NCBI GenBank assembly: GCA_965649765.1
Contig: OZ287749.1
Location: 94,240,001 to 94,304,000 of the forward strand
DNA: 64,000 bases
Reading direction: 5' to 3'
Source: Bispira polyomma
Taxonomy: Eukaryota
Below, piece after piece: positions 1 to 51,388 of the stretch (the stretch's first letter is position 1; every line of letters begins with the position of its first letter). The notes under the pieces were generated by a model that was not told the DNA's origin, did no database searches, and saw nothing but the letters and a program-made list of their open reading frames with translations. A program made the translations under genes and the position numbers.

Positions 1-732
1 TAAAATTATATTTGTGAGAAACATCAACCAATAGAGAAGGCGAAAAACATAAACTTCTTGGCAAAGGGAATGACAATATCTTACCAATTGTAAACACACA
101 AATTAATCTTTCTCTCTTACAAAAAAACATGTTAAGCTTAAAACTTAAAAATATGGGCCCAACTGTAACCTAATTCAATGTACAGACAGGCATTATAGAA
201 TATTTAAGATATAGGTCATGTGGTTCAAAAGGCAAATGTCTTGAATGTTACACAGACCAATAACTGCATGAAACAAAGACTTTTAGAACTTGACAAAGGA
301 CAAAATATCACAATAATACCTATTGCCAAGTGGAAGAGCATATTATATCAAACAAATCCTTCTGTCAACAGTCCCTTGAAATGCACAGATTCCAAATATA
401 GACTAAATAAAATACCACAAGTTTTCAAGTTTGAATGAATGAAATCAGACACAAACTTATTCATTTACAGGAAGACCAAAGGAACTTCCAATAGTAAATT
501 GGAGTATATGTGTTGTAGGATTAAACTATTGACAATGCTACATACGTACAATGTATAAATAAACACAGTAAAATTTCCCCACTTTTCCATACCATGTATC
601 TCAATGAGAGACTTCCTTCTTAAGTAACCAATCTGTGGACAACTAATAATGGTGGCCGTAAACTATTTTAGAACAGATACACGGTGATAATTTGTGAAAA
701 CTGATACAGAGGTGAAACACTTGCACAAAAGA

Positions 733-3636
733 ATGGGTTGCTGTATTTTACTGACCCTTTTAGTTCTGTGCTGTATGACTAAAGCATTTTCTGCTGCTAC
801 TGGTTCTACGAGAAGTAAAACCTATAATGTCTCCAGGGTAAAGAGACGCATCATAGACTGGGATTTACATAGCACACCAGATAAGAGAGCAACTCTGGAT
901 ATAAGCACATATTCAAATCAAGAAGACAATGATTACAACTGCCTACAGAATCAGGTTATCCCGCAGTGTCAACAAGTTTTGAATCATTGTTTTATTTGTA
1001 AAGAAGGCTTACCTATTGCTGGGGTTACTGCTGGTGAAACGGTCTGCTTTATCAGCAACAACACTGAACTCAATCGAATCTTCCAGGGCTTAAAGAAGAC
1101 TACGGAGCTCCTACAGCTAGTGATCCTAAATAAATGGAAAGGCTACTTGCCAGTTGAACCTTCACCAATAGACATCACTCGACTGGGAACATTCACAAAG
1201 TTGAAATCATTCAAGTTGGCACCCTGCGATGAGGATTACAAACAACCATACCCTATCAAGTTTACGAAGGACACATTCAGGTATTTACGCGATTTATCAT
1301 CATTGTCCATTAACATAGCCAGTGTTGACCAGTCCTTGGCCAATATTGTCTCACACTTGCACAACTTGAAGACACTGGATCTCTCCTTTACCAGAAAGCT
1401 CAGCATGGTCAACGTGATTGACACCATAAAAGCTGTGAATGCCACAAGTCTGCGCTCCCTGTATCTTCTAACATTTCAGTGTGCTGGATGCAATGGCTAC
1501 AACTTCAGTTTGCACATTCCCACCTTCTTCTCCAATACAAGATTCCCAGCATTGGAAGAGCTGGTCATCAGTGAAAACAGCTTGGCCCGCATTTATCCAG
1601 GAATTACCCGCATTGCTCCCAACCTGAGGTTCTTGGACATATCAGGGAATATTTTATTGGATGGACACAATGCTGCCTTTATTATAGAAGTTTTACTACA
1701 CCCTAGCATTAAAGTACTGGACATGGCATACCAGGGATATGTAGGCGGGGGGAAATTTAGTTATCTAAACCATCAAATCAGGCCTGATGACAACCACATT
1801 GGTGTCAGACAAACCAGAGACTTAAAGAAATCTTACACGTCCCCTGCTCTAGGCAAGAACCCAATCATTTCTAGATCAGACAGATATATGGTCAGCTGTG
1901 TTAACAGAATTACAGAGATGCATTCCAGCCCAAATATCAGTGCTCTATTTTCTAACTTTGCACAGCAAAACAAAAAGCTCTTCCACAATATACTAAAATG
2001 TCTGCTGCCAACAGTGTTTGCAGAGGGACCTCCGATTGATGTAATACCAGAACTGAGAGATATTGTCAATACAACTTGTGCACTCTACATCAATATTCCA
2101 CTATCTCCAAATTTAAAAACTCTTTACATGAACCAACTGCACTTGGAAGCAGCATCGATAACTGGTGTGGTAGTGGATCAAAATATATGCTTCAGGAAAA
2201 ATAACCTCACCAACTTTATCTTTACCGATAATGCATACTGGATTAAGGCTGCTAAAATAGAGGACTTGCTTTCAAGATCATCCATAAGTGGACTGAACAA
2301 ACTAGCAAGCATAGATTTATCCAACAATGATCTGTTGGTTAATTTCACACATTTCACCGAAAATCTGTATACTCCGAGTGTACAAAACTTTACCATTGCC
2401 CAAAATAATATTACTTTTGTTAGCGATTACCAAGTATGTGGTGGGCAGACAATTCTGCAGAGAGTAGACTTCAGTGGTAATAGTTTAGGTAAGAAGCCAA
2501 ACTTTCCGCACAAACTGGTAAGTGGATGTTACCATCTGATTGAACTGGATTTGTCAAATAATCATTTTAATAATTCTGAGGAGGCTTTTAGTATTCATAT
2601 GTCTGACCTTCAAAGACTTCAAATCCTAAACTTAAGCAATAACCACCTGACTACAATTGGGAAAGAAATGAGAAAAGCCATTGACGAAAGTGCAGAACTA
2701 TCGCAACATCTGACCATTGATCTCGACCACAATCCACTTGTGTGCAACTGTCAAACGCTACCATTTACAAAATGGATAACAAATCATGTGAAACAAAGAA
2801 GTTCTAAAGTAAAGTTTCACAGATACGACCATTACAAATGTCTTGATATTTATTCTAGAGTGAGAAAACTCAATACTATAACCCCAGAAAAAGTAGATAA
2901 GTTTGACCATCAATGTCATCCATCAAATGTTATTTCAAATATCAAGATTGTGAGTATTACACTGGCGTGTGTCCTGTTCGTGCTACTCGTATACACTCTG
3001 TACCGTAAACGCTGGAGGCTTCGCTACCTTCTATTTGTACTCAAGCAGAAAACTCAAAGACTTCTCTGGTCGACAGAAAAAACAACCCCTAAAGTATGGA
3101 AATATGATGCCTTTGTCTCTTACTGTTCAGACGACAGATTCTGGGTGCATGGAGAGTTTCGCAGAATACTGGAGCACACATACGGATTCCGCTTATGCTT
3201 ACGTTACCGGGATTTTGAGGTTGGAGACACCATTAGCAATGCCATTCTTGAGAGTATAAAGCAAAGTCGTGAGATCATTATCATCATCAGTGATGCTGCA
3301 CTGACGCATGAATGGAACCAGTTTGAGCTGGAGCACAGCAACCTTCAAAGTGGTCGCAGGAAGAAGAGGCTGATTATCGTCAAGATGGGCAAGCTGAAGC
3401 ATATTGCTGAGAATCCACTAGCGGCCAACCTACTAGACCTACACGGTTACACAGAATGGTCAGACCACAGAGATAGGGTTCCTGTCTTTTGGGACAGTCT
3501 CGTGAAACATCTGTATGGCAAAGCTCATACCGCGAACCATTGCTCATGTCACTGCTTTTGGAGATGCTGTCACAGACACCAGGGATATCAGCAAATCACA
3601 GACTCACAGGACAGAGACAGTAGTACAGAGGAATAA
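733..3636 (+). CDS. Toll-like receptor (signal peptide, LRR ectodomain, LRR-CT, TM helix, TIR domain), single coding exon, ~967 aa
   Basis: Open frame 694-3636 with first ATG at 733 followed by a hydrophobic signal (MGCCILLTLLVLCCMTKAFSA). Many LxxLxLSxN repeats (LKTLDLSF, LRFLDISGN, LIELDLSNN, LQILNLSNNHL). LRR-CT NPLVCNC...KC...C, TM IVSITLACVLFVLLVYTLY then RKRWRLRY. TIR boxes YDAFVSY, LCLRYRDFEVG and FWDSL. Confidence 0.95.
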   Translation: MGCCILLTLLVLCCMTKAFSAATGSTRSKTYNVSRVKRRIIDWDLHSTPDKRATLDISTYSNQEDNDYNCLQNQVIPQCQQVLNHCFICKEGLPIAGVTAGETVCFISNNTELNRIFQGLKKTTELLQLVILNKWKGYLPVEPSPIDITRLGTFTKLKSFKLAPCDEDYKQPYPIKFTKDTFRYLRDLSSLSINIASVDQSLANIVSHLHNLKTLDLSFTRKLSMVNVIDTIKAVNATSLRSLYLLTFQCAGCNGYNFSLHIPTFFSNTRFPALEELVISENSLARIYPGITRIAPNLRFLDISGNILLDGHNAAFIIEVLLHPSIKVLDMAYQGYVGGGKFSYLNHQIRPDDNHIGVRQTRDLKKSYTSPALGKNPIISRSDRYMVSCVNRITEMHSSPNISALFSNFAQQNKKLFHNILKCLLPTVFAEGPPIDVIPELRDIVNTTCALYINIPLSPNLKTLYMNQLHLEAASITGVVVDQNICFRKNNLTNFIFTDNAYWIKAAKIEDLLSRSSISGLNKLASIDLSNNDLLVNFTHFTENLYTPSVQNFTIAQNNITFVSDYQVCGGQTILQRVDFSGNSLGKKPNFPHKLVSGCYHLIELDLSNNHFNNSEEAFSIHMSDLQRLQILNLSNNHLTTIGKEMRKAIDESAELSQHLTIDLDHNPLVCNCQTLPFTKWITNHVKQRSSKVKFHRYDHYKCLDIYSRVRKLNTITPEKVDKFDHQCHPSNVISNIKIVSITLACVLFVLLVYTLYRKRWRLRYLLFVLKQKTQRLLWSTEKTTPKVWKYDAFVSYCSDDRFWVHGEFRRILEHTYGFRLCLRYRDFEVGDTISNAILESIKQSREIIIIISDAALTHEWNQFELEHSNLQSGRRKKRLIIVKMGKLKHIAENPLAANLLDLHGYTEWSDHRDRVPVFWDSLVKHLYGKAHTANHCSCHCFWRCCHRHQGYQQITDSQDRDSSTEE

Positions 3637-42031: not shown

Positions 42032-42361
42032 TATGGTGAAACCGGGGTTTGGCTTTTAGTACGAACCCCAACCGCAGAACCTCAAAGTGATATAAAAGGT
42101 CAACGGCAGTCTGGAATCGTGGTAGTTATCTTGAGAAGTTCAAACTAAAAGGAGCGCCATATTGGAAAAGCTTTATATTCGCAGCCTTTGCTGTTGGAAA
42201 TCAACAGTTGAGGCATTCTACAAATACAAGAGACTACACAGTTAGTTGACTGTGTATATAACAATGATTAGTGCCAGCTCTGTGAAGTGTTAACAGCACA
42301 AGCTTCAGGGCTGGAGCAATAACATAACAGCAGCTAGGTTAGTGCACAAGAGTTTACTTTA
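42032..42361 (+). repeat. 5' LTR
   Basis: TATGGTGAAACC...GAGTTTACTTTA, matches 49667-49996; TATAAAA at 42091-42097. Confidence 0.95.
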
Positions 42362-42362
42362 T

Positions 42363-42381
42363 TGGTACCAGAAGTGGGGTT
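42363..42381 (+). promoter_or_regulatory. Primer binding site, complementary to the tRNA-Leu(TAA) 3' end
   Basis: TGGTACCAGAAGTGGGGTT, 1 nt after the 5' LTR. It is the reverse complement of ...AACCCCACTTCTGGTA-CCA, as recalled for metazoan tRNA-Leu(UAA). Confidence 0.8.
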
Positions 42382-42390
42382 AAAGCCAAT

Positions 42391-45300
42391 TTGCCAGTGG
42401 ATTCTGAGATGATTATTGTGTCAAGTGGAGACAACAAGGGAGCTTTGCTACCAAATCTTCTAGTGAAATCTGCTGAATTTATTCCAGTGCAGCTAATAAA
42501 TGACACCGAGGAGCCAATTGTTCTACGTGGAGGTCATGTGTTGGGATATGCAGTAGAATGTGAACATGTGTTGAATGAGATAGAAGATAACATTTGGGTG
42601 AGGACACAGTGTCAGCAACAGCTTCCAGAGCATCTACAGGGTCTGTTCGAGAGATCTGTGAAAAAAACTGACTACTGATGAAGCTGAAAAAGTTAGGACA
42701 TTGCTGATTAATTATCAGGACATATTTTCCAAAGGAAGCCATGATTTGGGATGCTTTACTGAGATCAGACACACAATGGATACTGGAGAGGAAAGGCCTG
42801 TGAAGCAGTCCATGAGAAGAATGCCTTTAGGTTTTGAAAACGAAGAGGAGGAAAACCTTAAGCTGATGTTAGACATTGGTGTTATAACAGAGTCATCATC
42901 AGACTGGGCATCTGCTCCAGTACTAGTGAGAAAGAAGGATGGAACAGTTAGATATTGTGTGGATTTTAGAGCGCTCAACTCAAAAACAGTAAAAGATTTG
43001 TTTCCGTGACCTTCGATTTCTCAGTGTATAGACCAACTAGCAGGAAATATGTATTTTTCGACTCTCGACATGGCTAGCGGCTATTGGCAAATTGAAATAG
43101 ATGAAAAGGACAGGCATAGAACTGCATTTATCACTAAATTCGGTTTGTTCGAACATAGGCGGATGGCCTTTGGACTTTGCAACGCGCCGGCTACTTTTCA
43201 GCGTGTAATACAGTTTGTCATGCGTGGCTTGACATGGGATAAAATACTGGCCTACATTGATGATGTGATTATTTTAGGGAAAAACTTTGAGGATCACCTC
43301 GATAACCTCCATCTGACCTTCGAAAGGTTCCGAAAATACAACCTGAAACTAAAACCCAAAAAGTGCAGCTTGTATCATTCTGAAACATTATTTCTGTGAA
43401 AAGTTGTGAGTCCTGAGGGAGTATCAGTGAATCCTGAGAATATACAGAAAGTGCAATGTTGGCCAATACCAAAATCAGTTAAAGATGTGGAGAAATTCCT
43501 AGTTTTTCTGAACTACCACAGAGAACACATAAGAGATTATACAAAGCTCACATCAAAACTCTATCTATTGACTGGGCTACTTTTTATTGGGGGGAGGAAG
43601 AGCAGGAGACATTTGAAACATTAAAAGAAAAATTAGTGACTGCCCCCATTCTTGTATATCCGAATGCAGATGACGTTTTTGTGTTGGATACGGATGCTTC
43701 CAATCACTCCATCGGAGCGGTACTATCACAGGTACAAAATGAACAAGAAAAAGTCATTTGCTACGGAAGTTTTGTGCTTACCCCAGAACAAAGGAAGTAT
43801 TGTGTGACAAGAAAAGAACTATTGGCTGTGGTACGATTCACAAGACAGTTTAGACATTATCTGTTAGGACGGAAATTTCTACTAAGAACCGATCACAACA
43901 GTTTAACGTGGCTTCTACGGTTCAAATACATCGAGGGACAGTTAGCACGCTGGCTTGAGGAGCTGAGTCAGTTTGATATGACCGTTCTTCACCGTCCTGG
44001 TACAAAGCATGGGAATGCAGATGGATTATCCCGGATTCCGGATGATTATACATTTTGTGATTGCTACAAGGCTGGGCTAGATCCGTCACTGTTGCCATGT
44101 AAAGGTTGTAAATATTGCACCAGAGCCCATAATCAGTGGTCAAGGTTCAGTGAAGAAGTGGATGATGTGATCCCATTAGCTATGAGAACTATTAGTGTAG
44201 AAAAGCCTATGGAGCCGTCGAATACTTGGATCACCGGTTATACGTATGAGCAGTTACAGGATGCGCAAATATCCGACCCATGTTTGCAGAAATTAATAAG
44301 TTGGATCTCTAATGGCCTGGAGCCGGAACAAAAGGATTTATCCCTATGTAGTCCGGATGTAAAGTACTTTTACTGAAACAAGCACATTTAGTGTATAACA
44401 ATGGACTATTGTATTATCTGTGGAAAGATGAAGTAAGTGATTGGCCATTGCTTATGATTCCAACTAGTTTAAAAGAAAAGGTTATGTCACTTAACCATGA
44501 TATGCCTTTAACTGGTCATATGGGGATCACAAAGACAACAGCTCGCATAAGGAAATCGTATTTGTGGTACGGAATGACTGGAGATGTCGAGTTATTTGTG
44601 AAATCTTGCGGGGTTTGTAACAGAAACAAAAAGGCCAGTGTGAAGCCGAAAGCGCCATTGGGACAGTACCATGCTGGTTCACCTCTAGAACGGGTTCACA
44701 TTGACATTCTTGGACCATTTACACCAAGCGCTAGAGGTAATCAATATGTACTGGTAATTATGCACCAGTTTACCAAATGGTTGGAATGTTTTCCGCTGCC
44801 GCATCAAAGTGCTGAAGAAGTTTCCAGATGTGTAGTCGACGGATTCATTTCAAGATTCGGTTGCCCTTTAGACATACATACCGACCAGGGTAGAAACTTT
44901 GAAGGGAAGTTATTTGCGTCTGTGTGTGAACTGTTACAAGTTGCTAAAACCCGTACAACGCCCTATAGACCATGTTCAAATGAGAACGATACAATAGAAC
45001 AATCCTACAGTTAATTAGATGTTTTTTGAGTAGCAATCAACAAACGTGGGATGAGCATCTTCAACAGTTAGCTGGGGCTATTCGTTCTACAATAAACAGA
45101 AATATCGGTTTCACTCCTAATTTAATGATGCTGGGCAGGGAAGTTATGCTACCAGTAGATTTAATGATGGGAACAATTGACAATCGGTATGATAGTGCAG
45201 CAGAATATGTGGTTAAGCTAAAAAACATTTTAAAACAGGTGCATACATTGGGTAGGGAGACTTTGTTATCCTCACAAATGCGTCAGAAAAGGGACTATGA

Positions 45301-45841
45301 CTTACGACTTAAAGTGCACACCTACGAAGTTGGAGACCTGGTATACAAATTGGACTCGACAAAGAAGGTAGGTCAAAGTCCTAAGTTACAACGGATCTGG
45401 AAGGGTCCTCTGCTGGTGGTTAAAGTTATTTCTCCAATACTCTTTAAAGTGGCAGAGAAAAAGAAAACCTATGTCTTACATCATGATAGGTTAAAGCCCT
45501 GCAGGGACAGAGAGGTACCACTTTGGTTAAGGAGAAAAAGAAATAATTTGTTACAGAATTTAGCAGAGACTCAAGATGATTCTGATCCAGAATCTATTGG
45601 CCTGAACATTCTATTTGATGAGACCAATGTAATCGAAAGTAGTAATGAAGTTATTAACAGTGATACCATTGTAGATAATAACCAGGCTGAGATTCCAGAT
45701 AATGTAATTAATGTAGAAGATCCCTTATCCAATACGCATGAGGACCTAGTTAGTGATGCATGTATTTCAGGCCGATTACCACCTAGTAGTAGAGGACGAA
45801 AGCGGAAGCAGCCTGGTCATCTAGCAGATTACCTTACTTAA
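42391..45841 (+). pseudogene. pol: Gypsy pol (RT, RNase H, integrase) with at least 6 disruptions
   Basis: RT: WASAPVLVRKKDG, YCVDFRALN, FSTLDMASGYWQI, MAFGLCNAPATFQR, YIDD. RNase H: LDTDAS, RKELLA, RTDH, NADGLSR. Integrase: H..H..CGVC, VHIDILG, HTDQG, GPY-like WKGP. In-frame TGA at 43007 and 43397; frame changes near 42670, 43580, 44370 and 44980. Confidence 0.95.
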
Positions 45842-45960
45842 GAATCTGTTATGTAGCTTGTATGGTTCGGTTCAGGTGAAGGTTTAGTGTAAGTTACTAA
45901 AATGCTCTTGTAATCTAACTGTTTATTCATGTGGTGTTGTTTTGAAATGCCTTATTGCAG

Positions 45961-47031
45961 ATGCCGCGGGGAGAGTCTCCCTATGTAAGGGGTCGCCAGC
46001 GAGGGGGCTCCGGCCGGAGAGGTGTAGGTGGAAGAGGATGAGGTCAGAGCCGCGGACACGACGTCTCTGGTGGTTACAGGAGTGGAGGGTATCGCCCTTG
46101 GTACCGTCCGTATGGTAGGGGTTCACGCCCAGGTAGTGTCAACCCCCAGGTAAGAGGTAGAGGGCGAGGGAATCAGCCTGAACCAAGGGGGCCGCGGGCA
46201 GGTCATGACGTTCCCCAGGTAAGCCATGAGAGTGTGGGTCTCTGTCATGAGGAAGATGGGAGAGCACCTAGGCAGGTAAGCCATGCAAGTGTGGGTCTCC
46301 GTCATGAGGAAGATGAGAGAGCACCTAGGCAAGCAGGACAGGTAAGAGGGCAGGCTGGTTCAAACGTTCAGACAGGGCGGAAACAACAGCATAGTGAAAG
46401 GTCCTCTAACACTGGTCCTGGTAGTAGGTATGGTGGTAGGGGTCATTCCGGGAACCATGGGCAACCAAGTCGCACCAACTGGACCCATTGGAACAAAAAC
46501 ACAGGTGCTTCAAGGGCACCTGAAACCATACCTGTTGAAGTATCCTTAACATCGCCACAGTCGACCAGTAGGGAAGAAGATGAGGCAGTAATAAGTATGC
46601 TGACCCAGATATTTAGCCTGGTAAGACTAGAAGTGATTAAAACCAGAGTATTTCATCCTTCAAACAGGGTAGAACCCTTTAACCAGGCACTGCTGATGGA
46701 ACGATGTTTGAGAGACATTAGGATCCAAATGGGCAATCAAGCAGCCCCACCTTCATCTGCTTTGGGGACACCAACACCAAAGTACCAGGAACTCCCAAGT
46801 ACGTCGGCTACCCAGAGTAGGCAAATGCAACCAGCACCGGGACATACCTCAGGAGCTAGTGTGCAAACTAAAGCTGAGGGCAAAAGCAATGTGTCGCCAG
46901 GCAATGTCTATGGAGCGGCACAAGAGGATTCCGAGTTTCAAGCTGTGAAAAGGAAGTCCTATGCTCAGCAAGATAAGAAGGTATTCCCTACAACAAAGCC
47001 GCAAGATAAAACAATACAAAATGCGGGCTGA
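45961..47031 (+). pseudogene. N-terminal part of the accessory ORF (RG/RGG-rich, disordered), one in-frame TGA at 46039
   Basis: Acceptor-like TTGTTTTGAAATGCCTTATTGCAG immediately precedes ATG 45961. Reads MPRGESPYVRGRQRGGSGRRGVGGRG*GQSRG...RGRGRG in the same frame as ORF 46234-47031. Confidence 0.65.
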
Positions 47032-49213
47032 GGGAAAGTGGCAAGTCGTTGGGTCAAGGAAGAGGAATTTTAAACCTAAACCAGGGCCAAGCGAGCCTAA
47101 AAAGTCTAAACCCGAAGTTAGAAAAGGTGTGGGGAAGGATACAAGGCGAAGTGGCGAGTCGGATGTTGTCACAAACCGAGTTCAGCCTGTCAAGAGAAAG
47201 GGTCCCCCTTACGAAGAAACGCCTGATGGTCCCTCTTTCAAAAAGAAGAAAAGACCTGCATGTTTTATGAAGGGTTGTGGAAAACCTCAGGCGCACATGA
47301 GGAAACACGTCATAGGGAAGCACCTACCTGAGGGTTTTAATACCGCGAGGGAAATGACGGATGATAAAAGAATGGCATCGTTGGAAGGTTTCGTGATAAC
47401 CATTCAGAACCTGTTGGGATGTAGCAATTATGAGGAACTGCTTCAAAAAGTTCAAATGCAGAAGTTGTATCCAGATCCTAGTCGAGTGCACCTCGAGACA
47501 TCAGAGGACGACTATCGTCTAATGGATCATTTTCAACTCTGGCTGTCAGGAAGTCATTTAAAGTGCACTCCCAATCCTAGTCCACCAAATTGTATAGCCT
47601 CGCTTGTGCATTGGAGGGTTGCAGCCTGCATGATAAACCATGTAGGGGAAGACAAGGCACAGGCCAAAACTTCGAAAACTCCAAGTATTGAAGTCCGTAT
47701 TGGAGACGTGTCAGGTGCGACGGCTAAGACAGAAGATCCTTTGGAGGCAACTGTTGTAAAGAAGGTGGTAGAGCCAACCTCTCCAAGTAAAAGAAAGGTG
47801 GGACTAACTCGCAAGACAAAATCCATCCTGTCTAGAGTCCTAACACAATCTGTAGCAGAGGCTATAAAGCAAGCACGGCAAGGAGAACCAGGACCAAGTG
47901 CGTCAGCTGAGGCTGAGTCTAAGCTGATGGATACTGATGCACTAGTTGGTGAACTAAACGTGGCATTGGGTTTAACTGACAGCGAAACAGATGCAGAAGC
48001 AAAAGAAGCAAACTCTGCAGTAACCCAGATGGAGGTGACAGAAAAACCTGAGGCTGGGCCTAGTGACAGTGAAGCTGGGGCGTCCAAGTACAAGAAAGGT
48101 GAATCGTCCTTTGCAATGACTGCCACGGAGGTGTCAAGGCGGTATAAGGCTGGAGAATTAACACAGTCTCAGTTCTCCCAGATTATCTTCGTGAATGAGA
48201 AGGAGTCAGCATGGGAAGAAGCAAAGCCATCTTACAGTGAGATATTACAGAAGCCTTCAGCTGTGAAAGTAAAGCCACAACCTCAGATGAAAGACGTTGG
48301 GAAACCCTGTTCAGAGTTTAGTTGGGAGAAAAGGAGATCAACTTTGGGAACCTGTCCGGAGTCACGAAAGATACCATTTGTTGACTCACATATGCACATG
48401 GACAAGCTTAAGGAAATGACACGCATGACCAAATTGGACGACTTACTACGGGTGGGTCCTATGCCTGAAGTGCCTGTACGCTTGGAAGCTGCAGTAGCAA
48501 ACTTTTGTTTTGAAATACTAAGTCGTGAGGAGATCCTCGTGTTTAAGAGGGACAATCGGCTATCCTTTACCTATGGCGTGCACCCAAAGCTAGCAAGGTC
48601 TATTTCACCAAAAAAGCTGGAGATTGTAAAGTCTTCCATTGAAAAGGATCCTCGATGTGTCGGGATTGGTGAAATAGGAATGGAGTTTACCCATGGTTTT
48701 TCCAGGTGGCGTGAACATCAAGTCAAGTTGTTGCGAGAACTCCTTAATTTTTATGTCAAAAAACAGTGGTCAAAGGTGATAGTGATCCATTGTCGAGATT
48801 TCAGTAACTCGCAGGACGCCAGTGATTTGTGTTTGGCTGGAATGACAGATATAATTAAAGAAAAGGACAAAAAGCAAAAAGTGCATAGGCATTGTTATAA
48901 CGGGGGAATGAAGGAGATGAAAAAATGGCAGGAAAATTTTCCTGGGATACTGTTCGGATTCACCAGGTTATTACTGCGTGCATCACGACACCCTGAAGTA
49001 GATCAGGTAGTACAGGAACTGCCTTTGAAAAAGATACTCCTGGAAACAGATTCCCCGTATCTGCTAGCCCCAGAACATTATAGCTGCACCTACAACACTT
49101 GCTACGGGGTGGAGGTTATAGCAAGAAGGGTAGCGGAGTTAAAGCAGAGTACAGTGGAGGAGGTTCTCAGGGTTACTTCTGAGAATGCCAAAAAGCTGTA
49201 CTCGCTGAGGTAA
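47021..49213 (+). CDS. Retrotransposon-borne protein: NLS, C2H2-like Zn finger, low-complexity linker, C-terminal TatD-family nuclease (48377-49213)
   Basis: Uninterrupted 730-codon frame. FVDSHMH, YGVHP, VGIGEIG, VIVIHCR, VHRHCY, ILLETDSPYL and ARRVAELK...TSENAKKLY match the TatD pattern. CFMKGC-x9-H-x4-HLP at 47261-47329. Confidence 0.9.
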   Translation: MRAEGKWQVVGSRKRNFKPKPGPSEPKKSKPEVRKGVGKDTRRSGESDVVTNRVQPVKRKGPPYEETPDGPSFKKKKRPACFMKGCGKPQAHMRKHVIGKHLPEGFNTAREMTDDKRMASLEGFVITIQNLLGCSNYEELLQKVQMQKLYPDPSRVHLETSEDDYRLMDHFQLWLSGSHLKCTPNPSPPNCIASLVHWRVAACMINHVGEDKAQAKTSKTPSIEVRIGDVSGATAKTEDPLEATVVKKVVEPTSPSKRKVGLTRKTKSILSRVLTQSVAEAIKQARQGEPGPSASAEAESKLMDTDALVGELNVALGLTDSETDAEAKEANSAVTQMEVTEKPEAGPSDSEAGASKYKKGESSFAMTATEVSRRYKAGELTQSQFSQIIFVNEKESAWEEAKPSYSEILQKPSAVKVKPQPQMKDVGKPCSEFSWEKRRSTLGTCPESRKIPFVDSHMHMDKLKEMTRMTKLDDLLRVGPMPEVPVRLEAAVANFCFEILSREEILVFKRDNRLSFTYGVHPKLARSISPKKLEIVKSSIEKDPRCVGIGEIGMEFTHGFSRWREHQVKLLRELLNFYVKKQWSKVIVIHCRDFSNSQDASDLCLAGMTDIIKEKDKKQKVHRHCYNGGMKEMKKWQENFPGILFGFTRLLLRASRHPEVDQVVQELPLKKILLETDSPYLLAPEHYSCTYNTCYGVEVIARRVAELKQSTVEEVLRVTSENAKKLYSLR

Positions 49214-49654
49214 AGAGGCTATCTGTAGGGGGTAGGAAGTGGCACCGACGTAACAAGTACGGTACTGCGTTCTGGGCAACCAGGGTGATTAGCGATTACC
49301 TAGATAAAATCAGGGGGTATATTTGGTAAGGGTGGAGAATGTGTAACTTGCAGCCTAGAATATAGTGGATGAAGGTATGTAACCACCCAAGTAAAATCTA
49401 TGGACAACTATGGACAATTGTAAAGTATGAGCAGCTATTTTTATTTTTAAAAAAAGTAATCACCCTGGTAAAGATTATAACATCTATGGTCAGTATAAAG
49501 TAAAAAGTAAATTTAGATGAAGTTTATATCATCTATGAACATTGTAATAAAAGTAAATTTAGGTGGTTGCAATAACGTAAATATATGAACTTTAAAAGTA
49601 GTATTTCCAAGCAAAATAATGTAGAGTCCAGGAGCTGTCGAGGTGGCCTATCAT

Positions 49655-49666
49655 GAGGGGGAGAAG
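49655..49666 (+). promoter_or_regulatory. Polypurine tract
   Basis: GAGGGGGAGAAG directly abutting the TG of the 3' LTR. Confidence 0.9.
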
Positions 49667-49996
49667 TGTGGTGAAACCAGGGTTTGGCTTTTAGTACGAA
49701 CCCCAACCGCAGAGCCTCGAAGTGATATAAAAGGTCAAGGGCAGTCTGGAATCGTGGTAGTTATCTTGAGAAGTTCAAACTAAAAGGAGCGCCATATTGG
49801 AAAAGCTTTATATTCACAGCCTTTGCTGTTGGAAATCAACAGTTGAGACATTCTACAAATGCAAGAGACTACACAGTTAGTTGACTGTGTATATAACAGT
49901 GATTAGTGCCAGCTCTGTGAAGTGTTAACAGCACAAACTTCAGGGCTGGAGCAATAACATAACAGCGGCCAAGTTAGTGAACAAGAGTTTACTTTA
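49667..49996 (+). repeat. 3' LTR
   Basis: TGTGGTGAAACC...GAGTTTACTTTA, followed by the ATAT TSD. Confidence 0.95.
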
Positions 49997-51388
49997 ATAT
50001 TAATCTAATAAATTAAAATATTAATATTAAAATAAAGTTAACAGCTCGAACAGCAAAAATATAAGCAAGTAAGCATAAATAACAGAATGCATAACTTTTT
50101 TATCCCTCCTAGCTACCCTAACTTTAAAAATAATTAAAGGGTGGTCACCCGAAAAAAGGGTACCCATCTATGTCAAAGTGTGTCGACATTTAGTAGTCAT
50201 ATACTTTTGCTGTCTCAGGAAAAAAAGAAAAAGATTTGTAGATTATTGTGGGTTTATGCATAAGCTAATTGATATGTTTAAAGTACTGTGTATATTATGT
50301 TAATGTTTTGAAATGGTAAAATTTAACAACTAACACCTCCGTTTAAGTTTACTGTTTTGATAGAAGAATGGCGATAATACAAGATTTGTCGAAGTTGCAA
50401 ATGTGTTGTTGTGCCACTGTTCCAACGAGTTTTCTGTCATCGGCAGTGCCTTGAATTTGTAATGTACGCACAAGGGACAGACAATCTAGTGACATTACAG
50501 CCTATGACTGGTGACTAGGTCTGCATCCCCCCCCCCCCCCCCCGCCCCCACTTCTCTACAGAATGACTAACATGATATATTAAACCTAACAATATGCTGA
50601 ATACACCTTCACCAAAATATGGCACAAATTCACTATATGCACATGACAGCCCTACCATACTATATACAAATTATGGACCCATTTACAACGATTGAACTTA
50701 CTGCTTTGCAATAAACCAAAATATCTTTGCCAAATTGTAACTGCTACTTTAGGCATTATGGGCATAATGCCTCGTTAAAAACAAGTGATATTTTTACAAC
50801 TTTATGTTGTGTTTAGAAAATTGACAAAAAACCACCAATTTGCAAAGCAATGCCGTTACACCATCAAGTAAATAAGGCTAAACCACCAAGGTGCTAAACC
50901 TCATGTCTTCAGTAAAGTGGTGCAATGATGAAATCATTTTAATGGGCGTTTGATGACAAGACATATTGTAGTTTAATTAAATTACTACTTGATACTTAAG
51001 CCATGATCGGGTCTGTATGTTTCACGGCAATATTCGTTGACATCTTATTTAACCTCTCACAAACTCAGATACCTAAAAAGTTAAAGTAGAAAATTGGCTA
51101 TTAAGTTTAAATCTTTTAACCAGAAGTGCCCAAGTTTAAATATTTTTTTGTTCACATAATTATTCTGTTTTGTGTGTGTAGTGTATCATACCCTGCTTTA
51201 GTTGTAATCCAGCTTGCAAGAATCATAGCTTGGGAGTGTTAGTTGTATAGAGTTCACTTTTGATCTTTAACCCATTATTTAGGGTCACAGGAATACTGGG
51301 CCTTGTGGGTAACACACTCGCTTAGGATTGCAGAGTACCTGGGTTCAATCCCAGTTTGGGGCTCCTAGGTACGATGCATAGTGGTCTG

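What the first reader, a model, noticed from the sequence alone, without database searches (positions are those of the whole stretch)
45961..49213. Gypsy LTR retrotransposon carrying a TatD nuclease gene in the env position
Seen: between the integrase stop (45841) and the PPT/3' LTR, inside the TSD-bounded element, lies a sense-strand, uninterrupted ORF ending in a complete TatD domain. All classical metal/catalytic positions are present: HxH (DSHMH), E (GEIG), H (IHCR), H (RHCY) and D (ETD). Established: TatD/TATDN proteins are amidohydrolase-fold metal-dependent 3'-5' exonucleases/AP endonucleases, and TATDN2 acts on R-loops. The usual third ORF of Gypsy elements is env, yet this ORF has no signal peptide or TM helix. 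Inference: this is a Gypsy lineage that captured a nuclease as cargo. It might trim or clear cDNA and RNA:DNA hybrids to evade nucleic-acid sensing, handle abasic sites after deaminase/UNG attack, or destroy competing elements. Such elements could also account for multi-copy 'TatD hydrolase' gene models in invertebrate annotations. I cannot verify novelty without a literature/Repbase search.
Basis: partly seen in the sequence, partly recalled or inferred. Interest (0 to 1): 0.92.

Follow-up and report, generated by a model that had tools for sequence, protein, structure and literature searches.

The report
Gypsy retrotransposon lineage carrying TatD nuclease
A decayed copy of a Gypsy-type jumping gene carries, where an envelope gene would sit, a conserved two-part gene for a zinc-finger module plus a TatD nuclease, and the same layout recurs in intact elements of other marine invertebrates, so the nuclease belongs to this retroelement lineage and is not an accident of one copy.

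Summary
The TatD domain is real: Pfam PF01026 at full length (E 1.9e-38), a TatD TIM-barrel fold (TM 0.81-0.84 to solved TatD, YcfH and TATDN3), and all metal-binding residues present. It lies inside a 7,965-bp LTR element (42032-49996) with 330-nt LTRs 95.8% identical and a 4-bp target-site duplication.

Corrections to the finding:
- The reading frame is not open from 45961. ORF3 carries one frameshift in its N-terminal part.
- This copy is dead. gag and the start of pol are deleted, and pol has 4 frameshifts and 3 stops.

The main result is that the layout recurs. All 10 TatD relatives whose genomic context I looked up lie directly downstream of a Gypsy pol on the same strand. They come from six assemblies and include the sea urchin Diadema setosum. 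Two of them sit in about 13-kb elements with identical LTRs.

- ORF3 divergence tracks pol divergence (r 0.92).
- dN/dS is 0.08-0.22 in the one informative pair.
- ORF3 also holds a second conserved module, a CCHH zinc finger plus helical bundle, with no Pfam, PDB or viral-structure match.

No paper describing this was found. The closest precedent is the DEDDy-exonuclease ORF3 of bdelloid rotifer LTR elements. The function, probably an auxiliary nuclease acting on replication intermediates, is inferred only.

The parts
42028..42031 (.). left target-site duplication (ATAT)
   Evidence: Same 4 bases at 49997-50000. In AT-rich flanks a chance match is not negligible.
42032..42361 (+). 5' LTR, 330 nt
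   Evidence: Direct repeat found; ends read; 316/330 identical to the 3' LTR.
42363..42379 (+). primer-binding-site-like stretch starting with TGG, one base after the LTR
   Evidence: Read from the sequence. The tRNA was not identified; ARAGORN found no tRNA gene in the window.
42370..45841 (+). pol remnant (partial RT, RNase H, integrase zinc finger, core and C-terminal domain); broken gene given as one part
   Evidence: Pfam hits RVT_1, RT_RNaseH, Integrase_H2C2, rve, Integrase_p58_C. About 75% aa identity to L001 pol over its residues 148-1133. 4 frame changes and 3 in-frame stops; protease start and all of gag absent.
46234..49213 (+). ORF3 (two-module TatD gene); broken once (one frameshift), given as one part; homology to L001 ORF3 starts at 46390
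   Evidence: tblastn of L001 ORF3 (1017 aa) matches 46390-49210 in two frames. ORF list.
47231..47686 (+). N-module: CCHH zinc finger (ligand codons within 47261-47323) followed by a helical bundle
   Evidence: Conserved in 124 of 199 fetched proteins, always upstream of TatD. C, C, H, H invariant or at least 90% conserved. AF2 pLDDT 93, pTM 0.87. No PDB, BFVD or Pfam match.
48380..49204 (+). TatD nuclease domain, class II (HxH); ligand codons 48389-91, 48395-97 (HxH), 48671-73 (E), 48788-90 (H), 48890-92 (H), 49043-45 and 49049-51 (E-x-D)
   Evidence: PF01026 E 1.9e-38. TIGR00010 at 119.7 bits, below its 206 cutoff. PDB sequence hits YcfH, TATDN3 and TatD. Foldseek TM 0.81-0.84. Conserved columns.
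49655..49666 (+). polypurine-tract-like run abutting the 3' LTR
   Evidence: Read from the sequence.
49667..49996 (+). 3' LTR, 330 nt
49997..50000 (.). right target-site duplication (ATAT)

Best explanation
Shown:
- Window 42032-49996 is an old, defective insertion of a Ty3/Gypsy LTR retrotransposon.
- Its lineage carries, as a regular third gene between integrase and the 3' LTR, a two-module protein. The parts are a basic, disordered N-terminus, a CCHH zinc finger plus helical bundle (the N-module), a disordered linker, and a class II (HxH) TatD metal-dependent nuclease domain.
- The gene is an inherited, selected part of the lineage. It occurs in intact, recently inserted elements of other invertebrate genomes, co-diverges with pol, and keeps its metal ligands.

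Inferred (about 0.3 for this specific mechanism):
- ORF3 is translated from its own message.
- Its basic clusters take it to the nucleus.
- The zinc-finger module holds it on nucleic acid.
- It acts as an auxiliary nuclease on the element's own replication intermediates. It would remove RNA from RNA:DNA hybrids or trim 3' ends of the cDNA, as human TATDN2 does on R-loops and hairpin RNA, supplementing the element's RNase H and integrase.

The window copy itself is most likely inert.
For: TatD identity:
- Domain match; fold match.
- Catalytic and zinc-finger columns are invariant or at least 90% conserved in 45 proteins at 19-45% identity.

Element anatomy.

Recurrence:
- 10 of 10 TatD relatives looked up lie just downstream of a Gypsy pol on the same strand. 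These are L001-L005, L007, L008 (Diadema setosum), L009/L010, L013 and L014, from six assemblies.
- ORF3 lies inside the LTR pair in L001 and L002 (LTRs 100% identical), and in L005 and L008 (96%).

Co-divergence:
- Identity matrices of an RNase H piece and the TatD domain correlate at r 0.92, with 0 of 2000 Mantel permutations reaching that value.
- The ranking of relatives is the same for RNase H, integrase, TatD and the N-module.

Selection: L001 against L004 gives dN/dS of 0.22 for TatD, 0.08 for the N-module and 0.08 for RNase H.

Family size: 118 of the 150 full-length TatD domains among the fetched proteins also carry the N-module.

Not env-like: no hydrophobic segment.

Mechanistic analogy:
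- The HxH motif defines the class that holds TATDN2 and TATDN3, and TATDN2 proteins have long N-terminal extensions, often with a nuclear localisation signal (PMC10085689).
- Lysine/arginine clusters upstream of the zinc finger are visible in the translation.
Against: - No activity, substrate, expression or localisation data exist for any member.
- The dN/dS estimate rests on one pair of copies with 29 and 31 substitutions. All other pairs are saturated at synonymous sites.
- TatD enzymes also act as ssDNA 3' exonucleases and AP endonucleases (PMC10085689), so the substrate is open.
- NCBIfam TIGR00010 scores below its cutoff, so ORF3 is a divergent TatD.
- L002 and L005 share 93.5% nucleotide identity in gag and pol but only 69.5% in ORF3. 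ORF3 therefore also moves between related elements by recombination, and co-divergence is not strict.
- The hosts of most assemblies are unknown to me, so the taxonomic breadth beyond one echinoderm and a probably mollusc-like host is uncertain.
Confidence: 0.8

Rival explanations
1. Counter-defence role. The ORF3 nuclease removes surplus or abortive cDNA, RNA:DNA hybrids or small RNAs, so that host nucleic-acid sensing or small-RNA silencing is blunted. This would be a TREX1-like logic carried by the element itself.
For: It rests on the same conserved, probably active nuclease. ORF3 evolves faster than pol: 58% against 77-78% identity between the window and L001. ORF3 is also swapped between related elements, as expected for a gene in conflict with the host.
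Against: There are no data on targets. dN/dS is well below 1, with no sign of positive selection in the one informative pair. The catalytic core and zinc finger are strictly conserved, which does not look like an arms-race interface.
Confidence: 0.2
2. cDNA hygiene role. ORF3 acts as an AP endonuclease or 3' exonuclease on damaged or uracil-containing cDNA. This would be analogous to the dUTPase carried by some retroviruses and rotifer LTR elements.
For: TATDN1, TATDN3 and the three E. coli TatD paralogues have AP endonuclease and 3' exonuclease activity (PMC10085689). dUTPase is a known accessory domain in LTR elements (PMC5408684).
Against: AP activity was never shown for TATDN2 or for any class II protein with a long N-terminal extension. 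Nothing in the sequence separates this role from RNA:DNA-hybrid processing.
Confidence: 0.15
3. One-off transduction. This single copy picked up a host TatD gene or read through into one, and the arrangement has no lineage-level meaning.
For: The window copy is rearranged: gag is deleted and the genes are broken. The ORF3 region is more GC-rich than the rest of the element.
Against: The same gene order appears in 10 of 10 relatives from six assemblies. Several of these lie inside LTR pairs, two of which are identical. ORF3 co-diverges with pol.
Confidence: 0.02
4. ORF3 has a non-enzymatic, structural or envelope-like role, and the TatD fold is only a scaffold.
For: It sits in the env position. 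Enzymatic ORF3s of rotifer elements were once taken for env (PMC5408684).
Against: All metal ligands are conserved across 45 divergent members. There is no signal-peptide-like or transmembrane-like segment. The fold superposes on active TatD enzymes.
Confidence: 0.03

Closest known systems
Bdelloid rotifer LTR retrotransposons (Juno, Vesta) with a DEDDy 3'-5' exonuclease or GDSL esterase ORF3 (Rodriguez et al. 2017, PMC5408684)
   Same: These are LTR retrotransposons whose third ORF, in the env position, encodes an enzyme with intact catalytic residues and no transmembrane or coiled-coil features. In one case the enzyme is a 3'-5' nuclease, and some of those carry a Cys/His zinc motif. An auxiliary role in replication was proposed and is untested.
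   Different: The fold is unrelated (TIM-barrel amidohydrolase TatD against DnaQ-like DEDDy). The hosts differ (marine invertebrates including a sea urchin, against rotifers). The ORF3 here has a second conserved module of unknown fold. The rotifer ORF3s showed no departure from neutrality within genomes, whereas here one pair gives dN/dS of 0.08-0.22.
TATDN2 (human, medaka)
   Same: Both have a C-terminal class II (HxH) TatD domain behind a long, largely disordered, basic N-terminal extension. The TATDN2 activity on RNA in R-loops gives the best mechanistic analogy.
   Different: TATDN2 is a host gene. ORF3 lies inside LTR elements and is multi-copy, with clusters of 115, 60 and 33 member sequences. 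The papers read describe the TATDN2 N-terminus as disordered and mention no zinc-finger module. Orthology was not tested: no named TATDN2 came back from any search, and there is no solved structure.
Bacterial YcfH/TatD and human TATDN3 (closest solved structures: 6l25, 1yix, 4p5u, 2y1h)
   Same: The fold matches (TM 0.81-0.84) and so do the metal-ligand motifs.
   Different: Identity is only 19-25%. These are stand-alone proteins of about 260 aa, without the N-terminal extension or zinc-finger module. The NCBIfam subfamily and equivalog cutoffs are not reached.
Envelope-carrying Gypsy elements (errantiviruses and relatives; PMC13524379)
   Same: A third ORF sits downstream of pol, separated from it by a short spacer, inside the LTRs.
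   Different: ORF3 here has no fusion-glycoprotein features. It is a soluble nuclease-type protein. That paper does not mention nucleases or hydrolases.

Membership tests
TatD nuclease family (Pfam PF01026), class II | Profile match above the curated threshold over the whole domain | tested here: met
   132.8 bits against a cutoff of 27, profile positions 1-253 of 253.
TatD nuclease family (Pfam PF01026), class II | TIM-barrel amidohydrolase fold superposable on solved TatD enzymes | tested here: met
   AF2 domain pLDDT above 90. Foldseek E 3e-14 to 1e-9, with TM 0.79-0.85 to 6l25, 4p5u, 2y1h and 1zzm.
TatD nuclease family (Pfam PF01026), class II | N-terminal HxH motif (class II) plus E, H, H and D/E metal ligands | tested here: met
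   All present in the window and invariant or at least 90% conserved in 45 relatives. Class definition from PMC10085689.
TatD nuclease family (Pfam PF01026), class II | Metal-dependent nuclease activity | not testable with these tools
   No biochemical data exist.
NCBIfam TIGR00010 (YchF/TatD family DNA exonuclease subfamily) | Score at or above the curated cutoff | tested here: not met
   119.7 bits against a cutoff of 206. ORF3 is a divergent relative, not a member of the bacterial subfamily.
TATDN2 orthologue group | Groups with named TATDN2 proteins in a phylogeny that includes TATDN1, TATDN3, YcfH and YjjV | not tested
   No named TATDN2 sequence was returned by any search. My NJ tree of the 126 best hits held no usable outgroup.
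TATDN2 orthologue group | Host gene at a stable locus, not part of a mobile element | tested here: not met
   ORF3 lies inside LTR pairs, downstream of pol, and in multi-copy clusters.
Ty3/Gypsy (Metaviridae-type) LTR retrotransposon | Two LTRs in direct orientation with a target-site duplication, plus a primer-binding-site-like and a polypurine-tract-like stretch next to them | tested here: met
   The primer-binding-site tRNA was not identified.
Ty3/Gypsy (Metaviridae-type) LTR retrotransposon | pol domain order protease, RT, RNase H, integrase | tested here: met
   The order RT, RNase H, integrase is seen in the window. The full order including protease is seen in L002, L007, L008 and L013. 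The window copy lacks the protease.
Ty3/Gypsy (Metaviridae-type) LTR retrotransposon | gag with capsid and zinc-knuckle domains upstream of pol | tested here: not met
   Absent from the window copy. Present in relatives L001, L002, L007 and L008. The window holds a deleted derivative.
Ty3/Gypsy (Metaviridae-type) LTR retrotransposon | Placement in a named Gypsy clade (Mag, CsRn1, Gmr1, chromoviruses and others) by RT phylogeny | not tested
   No reference set of named clades was on hand.
Env-bearing Gypsy (errantivirus-like) | ORF3 with signal peptide, transmembrane anchor and fusion-protein features | tested here: not met
   Maximum hydropathy 1.16 and 1.41, with no window above 1.6. The domain content is TatD.
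DEDDy-ORF3 LTR elements of bdelloid rotifers | ORF3 with a DnaQ-like DEDDy exonuclease domain | tested here: not met
   The only Pfam family in ORF3 is PF01026. The fold search returns amidohydrolase-fold proteins only.

The most novel reading that the evidence does not exclude
The two-module ORF3 (CCHH zinc-finger/helical module plus class II TatD) marks a large, old clade of metazoan Gypsy elements in which a fourth enzyme has become a fixed part of the retroelement's replication toolkit. This element-borne gene pool and the heterogeneous animal TATDN2 clade (germ-cell genome guardians with long N-terminal extensions) may share a history, by capture in one direction or domestication in the other.
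Probability: 0.15. Interest if true: 0.85.

Novelty: new variant of a known kind. Interest (0 to 1): 0.62.

Why it matters
- LTR retroelements are usually described as gag, pol and sometimes env. Enzymatic third genes are known from only a few cases, such as the DEDDy exonuclease and GDSL esterase of rotifers, and dUTPase.
- This is a different nuclease fold, tied to a new zinc-finger module. It is held under constraint across elements as diverged as 28% in TatD, and is found in several assemblies including a sea urchin.
- It points to a replication or host-interaction step that needs an extra nuclease.
- It supplies a ready-made marker (two profile models) for annotating a whole element clade.
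- It warns that 'TatD/TATDN2-like' or 'uncharacterized' gene models in invertebrate genomes can be retroelement genes. One such model was found: XP_072166577.1 in Diadema setosum.
- It also raises the open question of how this gene relates to TATDN2.

Tried and rejected
- **Whole-ORF word-index search** found nothing, because the words came from the low-complexity N-terminus. The region search and the exhaustive search worked.
- **Cluster name look-ups** gave names for only 2 of 30 clusters. The host taxa of the ENA assemblies stay unknown, and no named TATDN2 was obtained.
- **NJ tree of 126 TatD domains** was meant to test monophyly against cellular TatDs. The best 150 hits are all close kin without an outgroup, so it was uninformative.
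- **dN/dS for most pairs** was saturated at synonymous sites. The L009/L010 pair has too few changes to use.
- **Fold and profile searches for the N-module** found no match in PDB, BFVD or Pfam at E up to 1.
- **tRNA scan** to name the primer-binding-site tRNA found none in the window.
- **The window LTR** has no nucleotide match in any fetched locus. No second copy of this exact family was available, and no other copy lies in the window.
- **Eight literature searches** on TatD or TATDN2 with retrotransposon, LTR, Gypsy, Ty3, transposable elements and reverse transcriptase, plus the gene-model name 'deoxyribonuclease TATDN2', found no description. Repbase, Dfam and GyDB could not be consulted.

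**Rejected explanations**
- A host gene next to an inserted element.
- A one-off transduction.
- An env-like role.

- No reading of pol or ORF3 across a frameshift. Each frame piece was searched apart.

- Those bounds bracket breaks.
Full report
**1. What is in the window**

A direct repeat pair marks an LTR element. Reading the ends gives these features:
- 330-nt LTRs at 42032-42361 and 49667-49996, with 316 of 330 bases identical.
- A 4-bp ATAT duplication on both sides.
- A TGG-initiated primer-binding-site-like stretch at 42363-42379.
- A 12-nt purine run at 49655-49666 that abuts the 3' LTR.

The element is 7,965 bp long. On the plus strand it holds Pfam-recognisable RT (partial), RNase H, integrase zinc finger, integrase core and integrase C-terminal domains, in that order. 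After a spacer comes an ORF that ends at 49213 and whose last 275 codons match PF01026 TatD_DNase end to end (E 1.9e-38, 132.8 bits). GC content rises from 0.34 in the background to about 0.40 in pol and about 0.50 in the ORF3 region.

**2. Checking the observation**

The TatD call is solid.
- Sequence hits to solved YcfH, TATDN3 and E. coli TatD have E values from 2e-13 to 1e-9.
- NCBIfam TIGR00010 scores 119.7 bits. That is below its cutoff, so this is a divergent member.
- An AlphaFold2 model has pLDDT above 90 across the domain. It superposes on TatD-family structures with TM 0.79-0.85.
They are invariant or at least 90% conserved in an alignment of 45 relatives at 19-45% identity.
- There is no transmembrane-like segment.

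Two points of the finding do not hold.
- The frame is not open from 45961. Compared with the intact 1017-aa ORF3 of relative L001, the window gene matches in two frames, so it carries one frameshift in its N-terminal part. Both conserved modules lie in the open downstream part.
- The copy is defective. gag and the protease end of pol are missing, which explains 7.97 kb against about 12.8 kb in L001. The pol remnant carries 4 frame changes and 3 in-frame stops relative to both L001 and L002. The LTRs are 4.2% diverged.

**3. The layout recurs**

A search restricted to the TatD region found six relatives at 45-60% identity. Their cluster sizes reach 115 members. An exhaustive profile-free search found 5,582 proteins at E up to 1e-3 and 42 at E up to 1e-30.

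I looked up the genomic context of ten TatD-bearing relatives. In all ten the gene lies directly downstream of a Gypsy pol on the same strand:
- L001 to L005, from assembly ERZ22147071.
- L007 and L009, from ERZ17174965.
- L010, from ERZ17093206.
- L013, from ERZ23488600.
- L014, from ERZ27295567.
- L008, from the sea urchin Diadema setosum chromosome OZ188192.1. There NCBI annotates the ORF as 'uncharacterized protein' XP_072166577.1, inside an intron of a host gene.

LTR pairs enclose gag, pol and ORF3 in four of these loci. They are 100% identical in L001 and L002, and 96% identical in L005 and L008. Intact copies of about 12.5-13 kb with identical LTRs show recent insertion.

**4. ORF3 belongs to the lineage**

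Single-frame pieces were compared separately and never joined. Identity of the window to L001, L002, L003, L004, L005, L007 and L008 is as follows.

| Piece | L001 | L002 | L003 | L004 | L005 | L007 | L008 |
|---|---|---|---|---|---|---|---|
| RNase H | 78 | 74 | 72 | 77 | 74 | 64 | 49 |
| Integrase | 77 | 72 | 74 | 67 | 71 | 54 | 53 |
| TatD | 58 | 49 | 47 | 55 | 44 | 31 | 28 |
| N-module | 47 | 41 | 38 | 43 | 37 | 25 | 26 |

- Over 12 elements, the RNase H and TatD identity matrices correlate at r 0.92. None of 2,000 Mantel permutations reached that value.
- The only pair with unsaturated synonymous sites is L001 against L004. It gives dN/dS of 0.22 for TatD (16 synonymous, 13 non-synonymous changes), 0.08 for the N-module (23 and 8) and 0.08 for RNase H.
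- Inheritance is not strictly vertical. L002 and L005 are 93.5% identical in gag and pol at the nucleotide level, but only 69.5% in ORF3 and 82.6% in the LTR. That indicates recombination between related TatD-bearing elements.

**5. A second module**

Residues upstream of TatD form a separately conserved unit at window 47231-47686.
- In the exhaustive search it hit proteins on its own.
- With profiles of both modules, 124 of 199 fetched proteins carry both, always in the order N-module then TatD. Eight carry the N-module only.
- Its hallmark is a C-x4-C-x9-H-x4-H set that is invariant or at least 90% conserved. The model shows it as a beta-beta-alpha zinc finger leading into a helical bundle, with pLDDT 93 and pTM 0.87.
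- It has no match in PDB (best E 3.5), in BFVD (best E 2.9) or in Pfam at E up to 1.
- The stretch before it is basic and predicted to be disordered, with lysine/arginine clusters.

**6. How it most likely works**

The points shown by the analysis are these:
- ORF3 is a soluble, two-module protein with a complete class II TatD active site.
- It is a separate ORF that follows pol after a short spacer of 33-290 nt in the relatives.
- It is conserved under purifying selection.

From the literature:
- Class II (HxH) TatD proteins include TATDN2 and TATDN3.
- TATDN2 proteins have long N-terminal extensions, often with a nuclear localisation signal (PMC10085689).
- Human TATDN2 is a Mg-dependent RNA 3' exonuclease and endonuclease. 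It removes the RNA strand of R-loops and leaves the DNA intact (PMC10711561).

The mechanism is inferred. ORF3 is made from its own message and enters the nucleus. The zinc-finger module tethers it to nucleic acid. It then processes RNA:DNA hybrids or 3' ends of the element's reverse-transcription intermediates, supplementing RNase H and integrase. I put about 0.3 on this specific mechanism. I put about 0.2 on a counter-defence role and about 0.15 on AP-site or uracil hygiene. The structural claim, that this is a lineage-defining and functional nuclease ORF3, I hold at about 0.85.

**7. Comparison with what is known**

- The nearest precedent is the ORF3 of bdelloid rotifer LTR retrotransposons. 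It encodes a DEDDy 3'-5' exonuclease or a GDSL esterase (PMC5408684). The position and logic are the same, but the fold, hosts and companion module differ.
- TATDN2 shares the overall architecture. However, it is a host gene, and the papers read describe its N-terminus as disordered (PMC12709183). Orthology could not be tested.
- Eight full-text searches found no paper that describes a TatD gene in a retroelement.
- A 'TATDN2' gene model listed among transposon-like genes in the giant squid Hox cluster (PMC6962438) fits the idea that such ORFs enter gene sets. An oyster paper listing 'deoxyribonuclease TATDN2' fits too. Neither is proof.
- Repbase, Dfam and GyDB were not available.

**8. Host**

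The window also holds an intact, intronless LRR-TIR (Toll-like receptor-type) ORF at 694-3636.
- Its best relative, at 55% identity, lies in assembly ERZ22147071, the same assembly that holds the closest elements.
- The only named hit is a Haliotis TLR4 at 27% identity.
- The host is an invertebrate and possibly a mollusc, but the evidence is weak.

**9. Verdict**

This is a new variant of a known kind, an LTR retroelement with an enzymatic rather than envelope third gene. It is widespread and under constraint, and it carries an uncharacterised companion module. The function is inferred only.

**10. Conduct**

- Early notebook entries list tool-printed bounds of ORF pieces that bracket breaks. 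I declare this as a slip.

Noticed in passing
window 694-3636 (+): An intact 980-aa intronless ORF with leucine-rich repeats and a TIR domain (Toll-like receptor type). Its best relative (55% identity) is in assembly ERZ22147071. The only named hit is Haliotis asinina TLR4 at 27%.
   Followed up: partly
window 41021-41914 (-): A reverse-transcriptase (RVT_1) fragment of another retroelement on the opposite strand, abutting the 5' LTR.
   Followed up: no
L004 compared with L001; window 42362-42370: L004 is 97% identical to L001 in pol at the nucleotide level and also lacks gag, like the window copy. gag-less derivatives that keep pol and ORF3 therefore arose at least twice.
   Followed up: partly
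L002 compared with L005: A mosaic pair. gag and pol are 93.5% identical at the nucleotide level, but ORF3 is only 69.5% identical (over 1544 of 2466 nt) and the LTR 82.6%. This suggests recombination that swaps the ORF3/LTR end between related elements.
   Followed up: partly
window 42370-45841 compared with 46234-49213: In this dead copy pol carries 7 breaks but ORF3, of similar length, carries only 1. ORF3 is also markedly more GC-rich (about 0.50 against 0.40). Chance, composition or some retained use cannot be told apart.
   Followed up: no
P0141 (1139 aa, ENA contig of 10.8 kb): A two-module ORF3 relative with a weak NADAR-domain match (E 4.5e-5, below cutoff) at its N-terminus.
   Followed up: no
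L008 5865-9911; L014 2830-6954: The integrase of the Diadema element and of L014 ends in a PHD finger. The window's close relatives show only the Integrase_p58_C motif.
   Followed up: no
L006 8001-12452 (P0029, 1483 aa): A long ORF with the N-module at its C-terminus. It has no TatD domain, no Pfam hit and no pol nearby. It is either a truncated ORF3 or another use of the module.
   Followed up: partly
L001 16007-23038; L003 1-1651; L004 15394-21860: Satellite arrays (units of 133, 169 and 351 nt in L001; 140 and 148 nt in L003; 42 nt in L004) lie next to the elements in assembly ERZ22147071.
   Followed up: no
L001 2628-5903; L002 2595-5750: gag is unusually long (1091 and 1051 aa). It has one zinc knuckle near the C-terminus and weak coiled-coil-type Pfam matches.
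   Followed up: no
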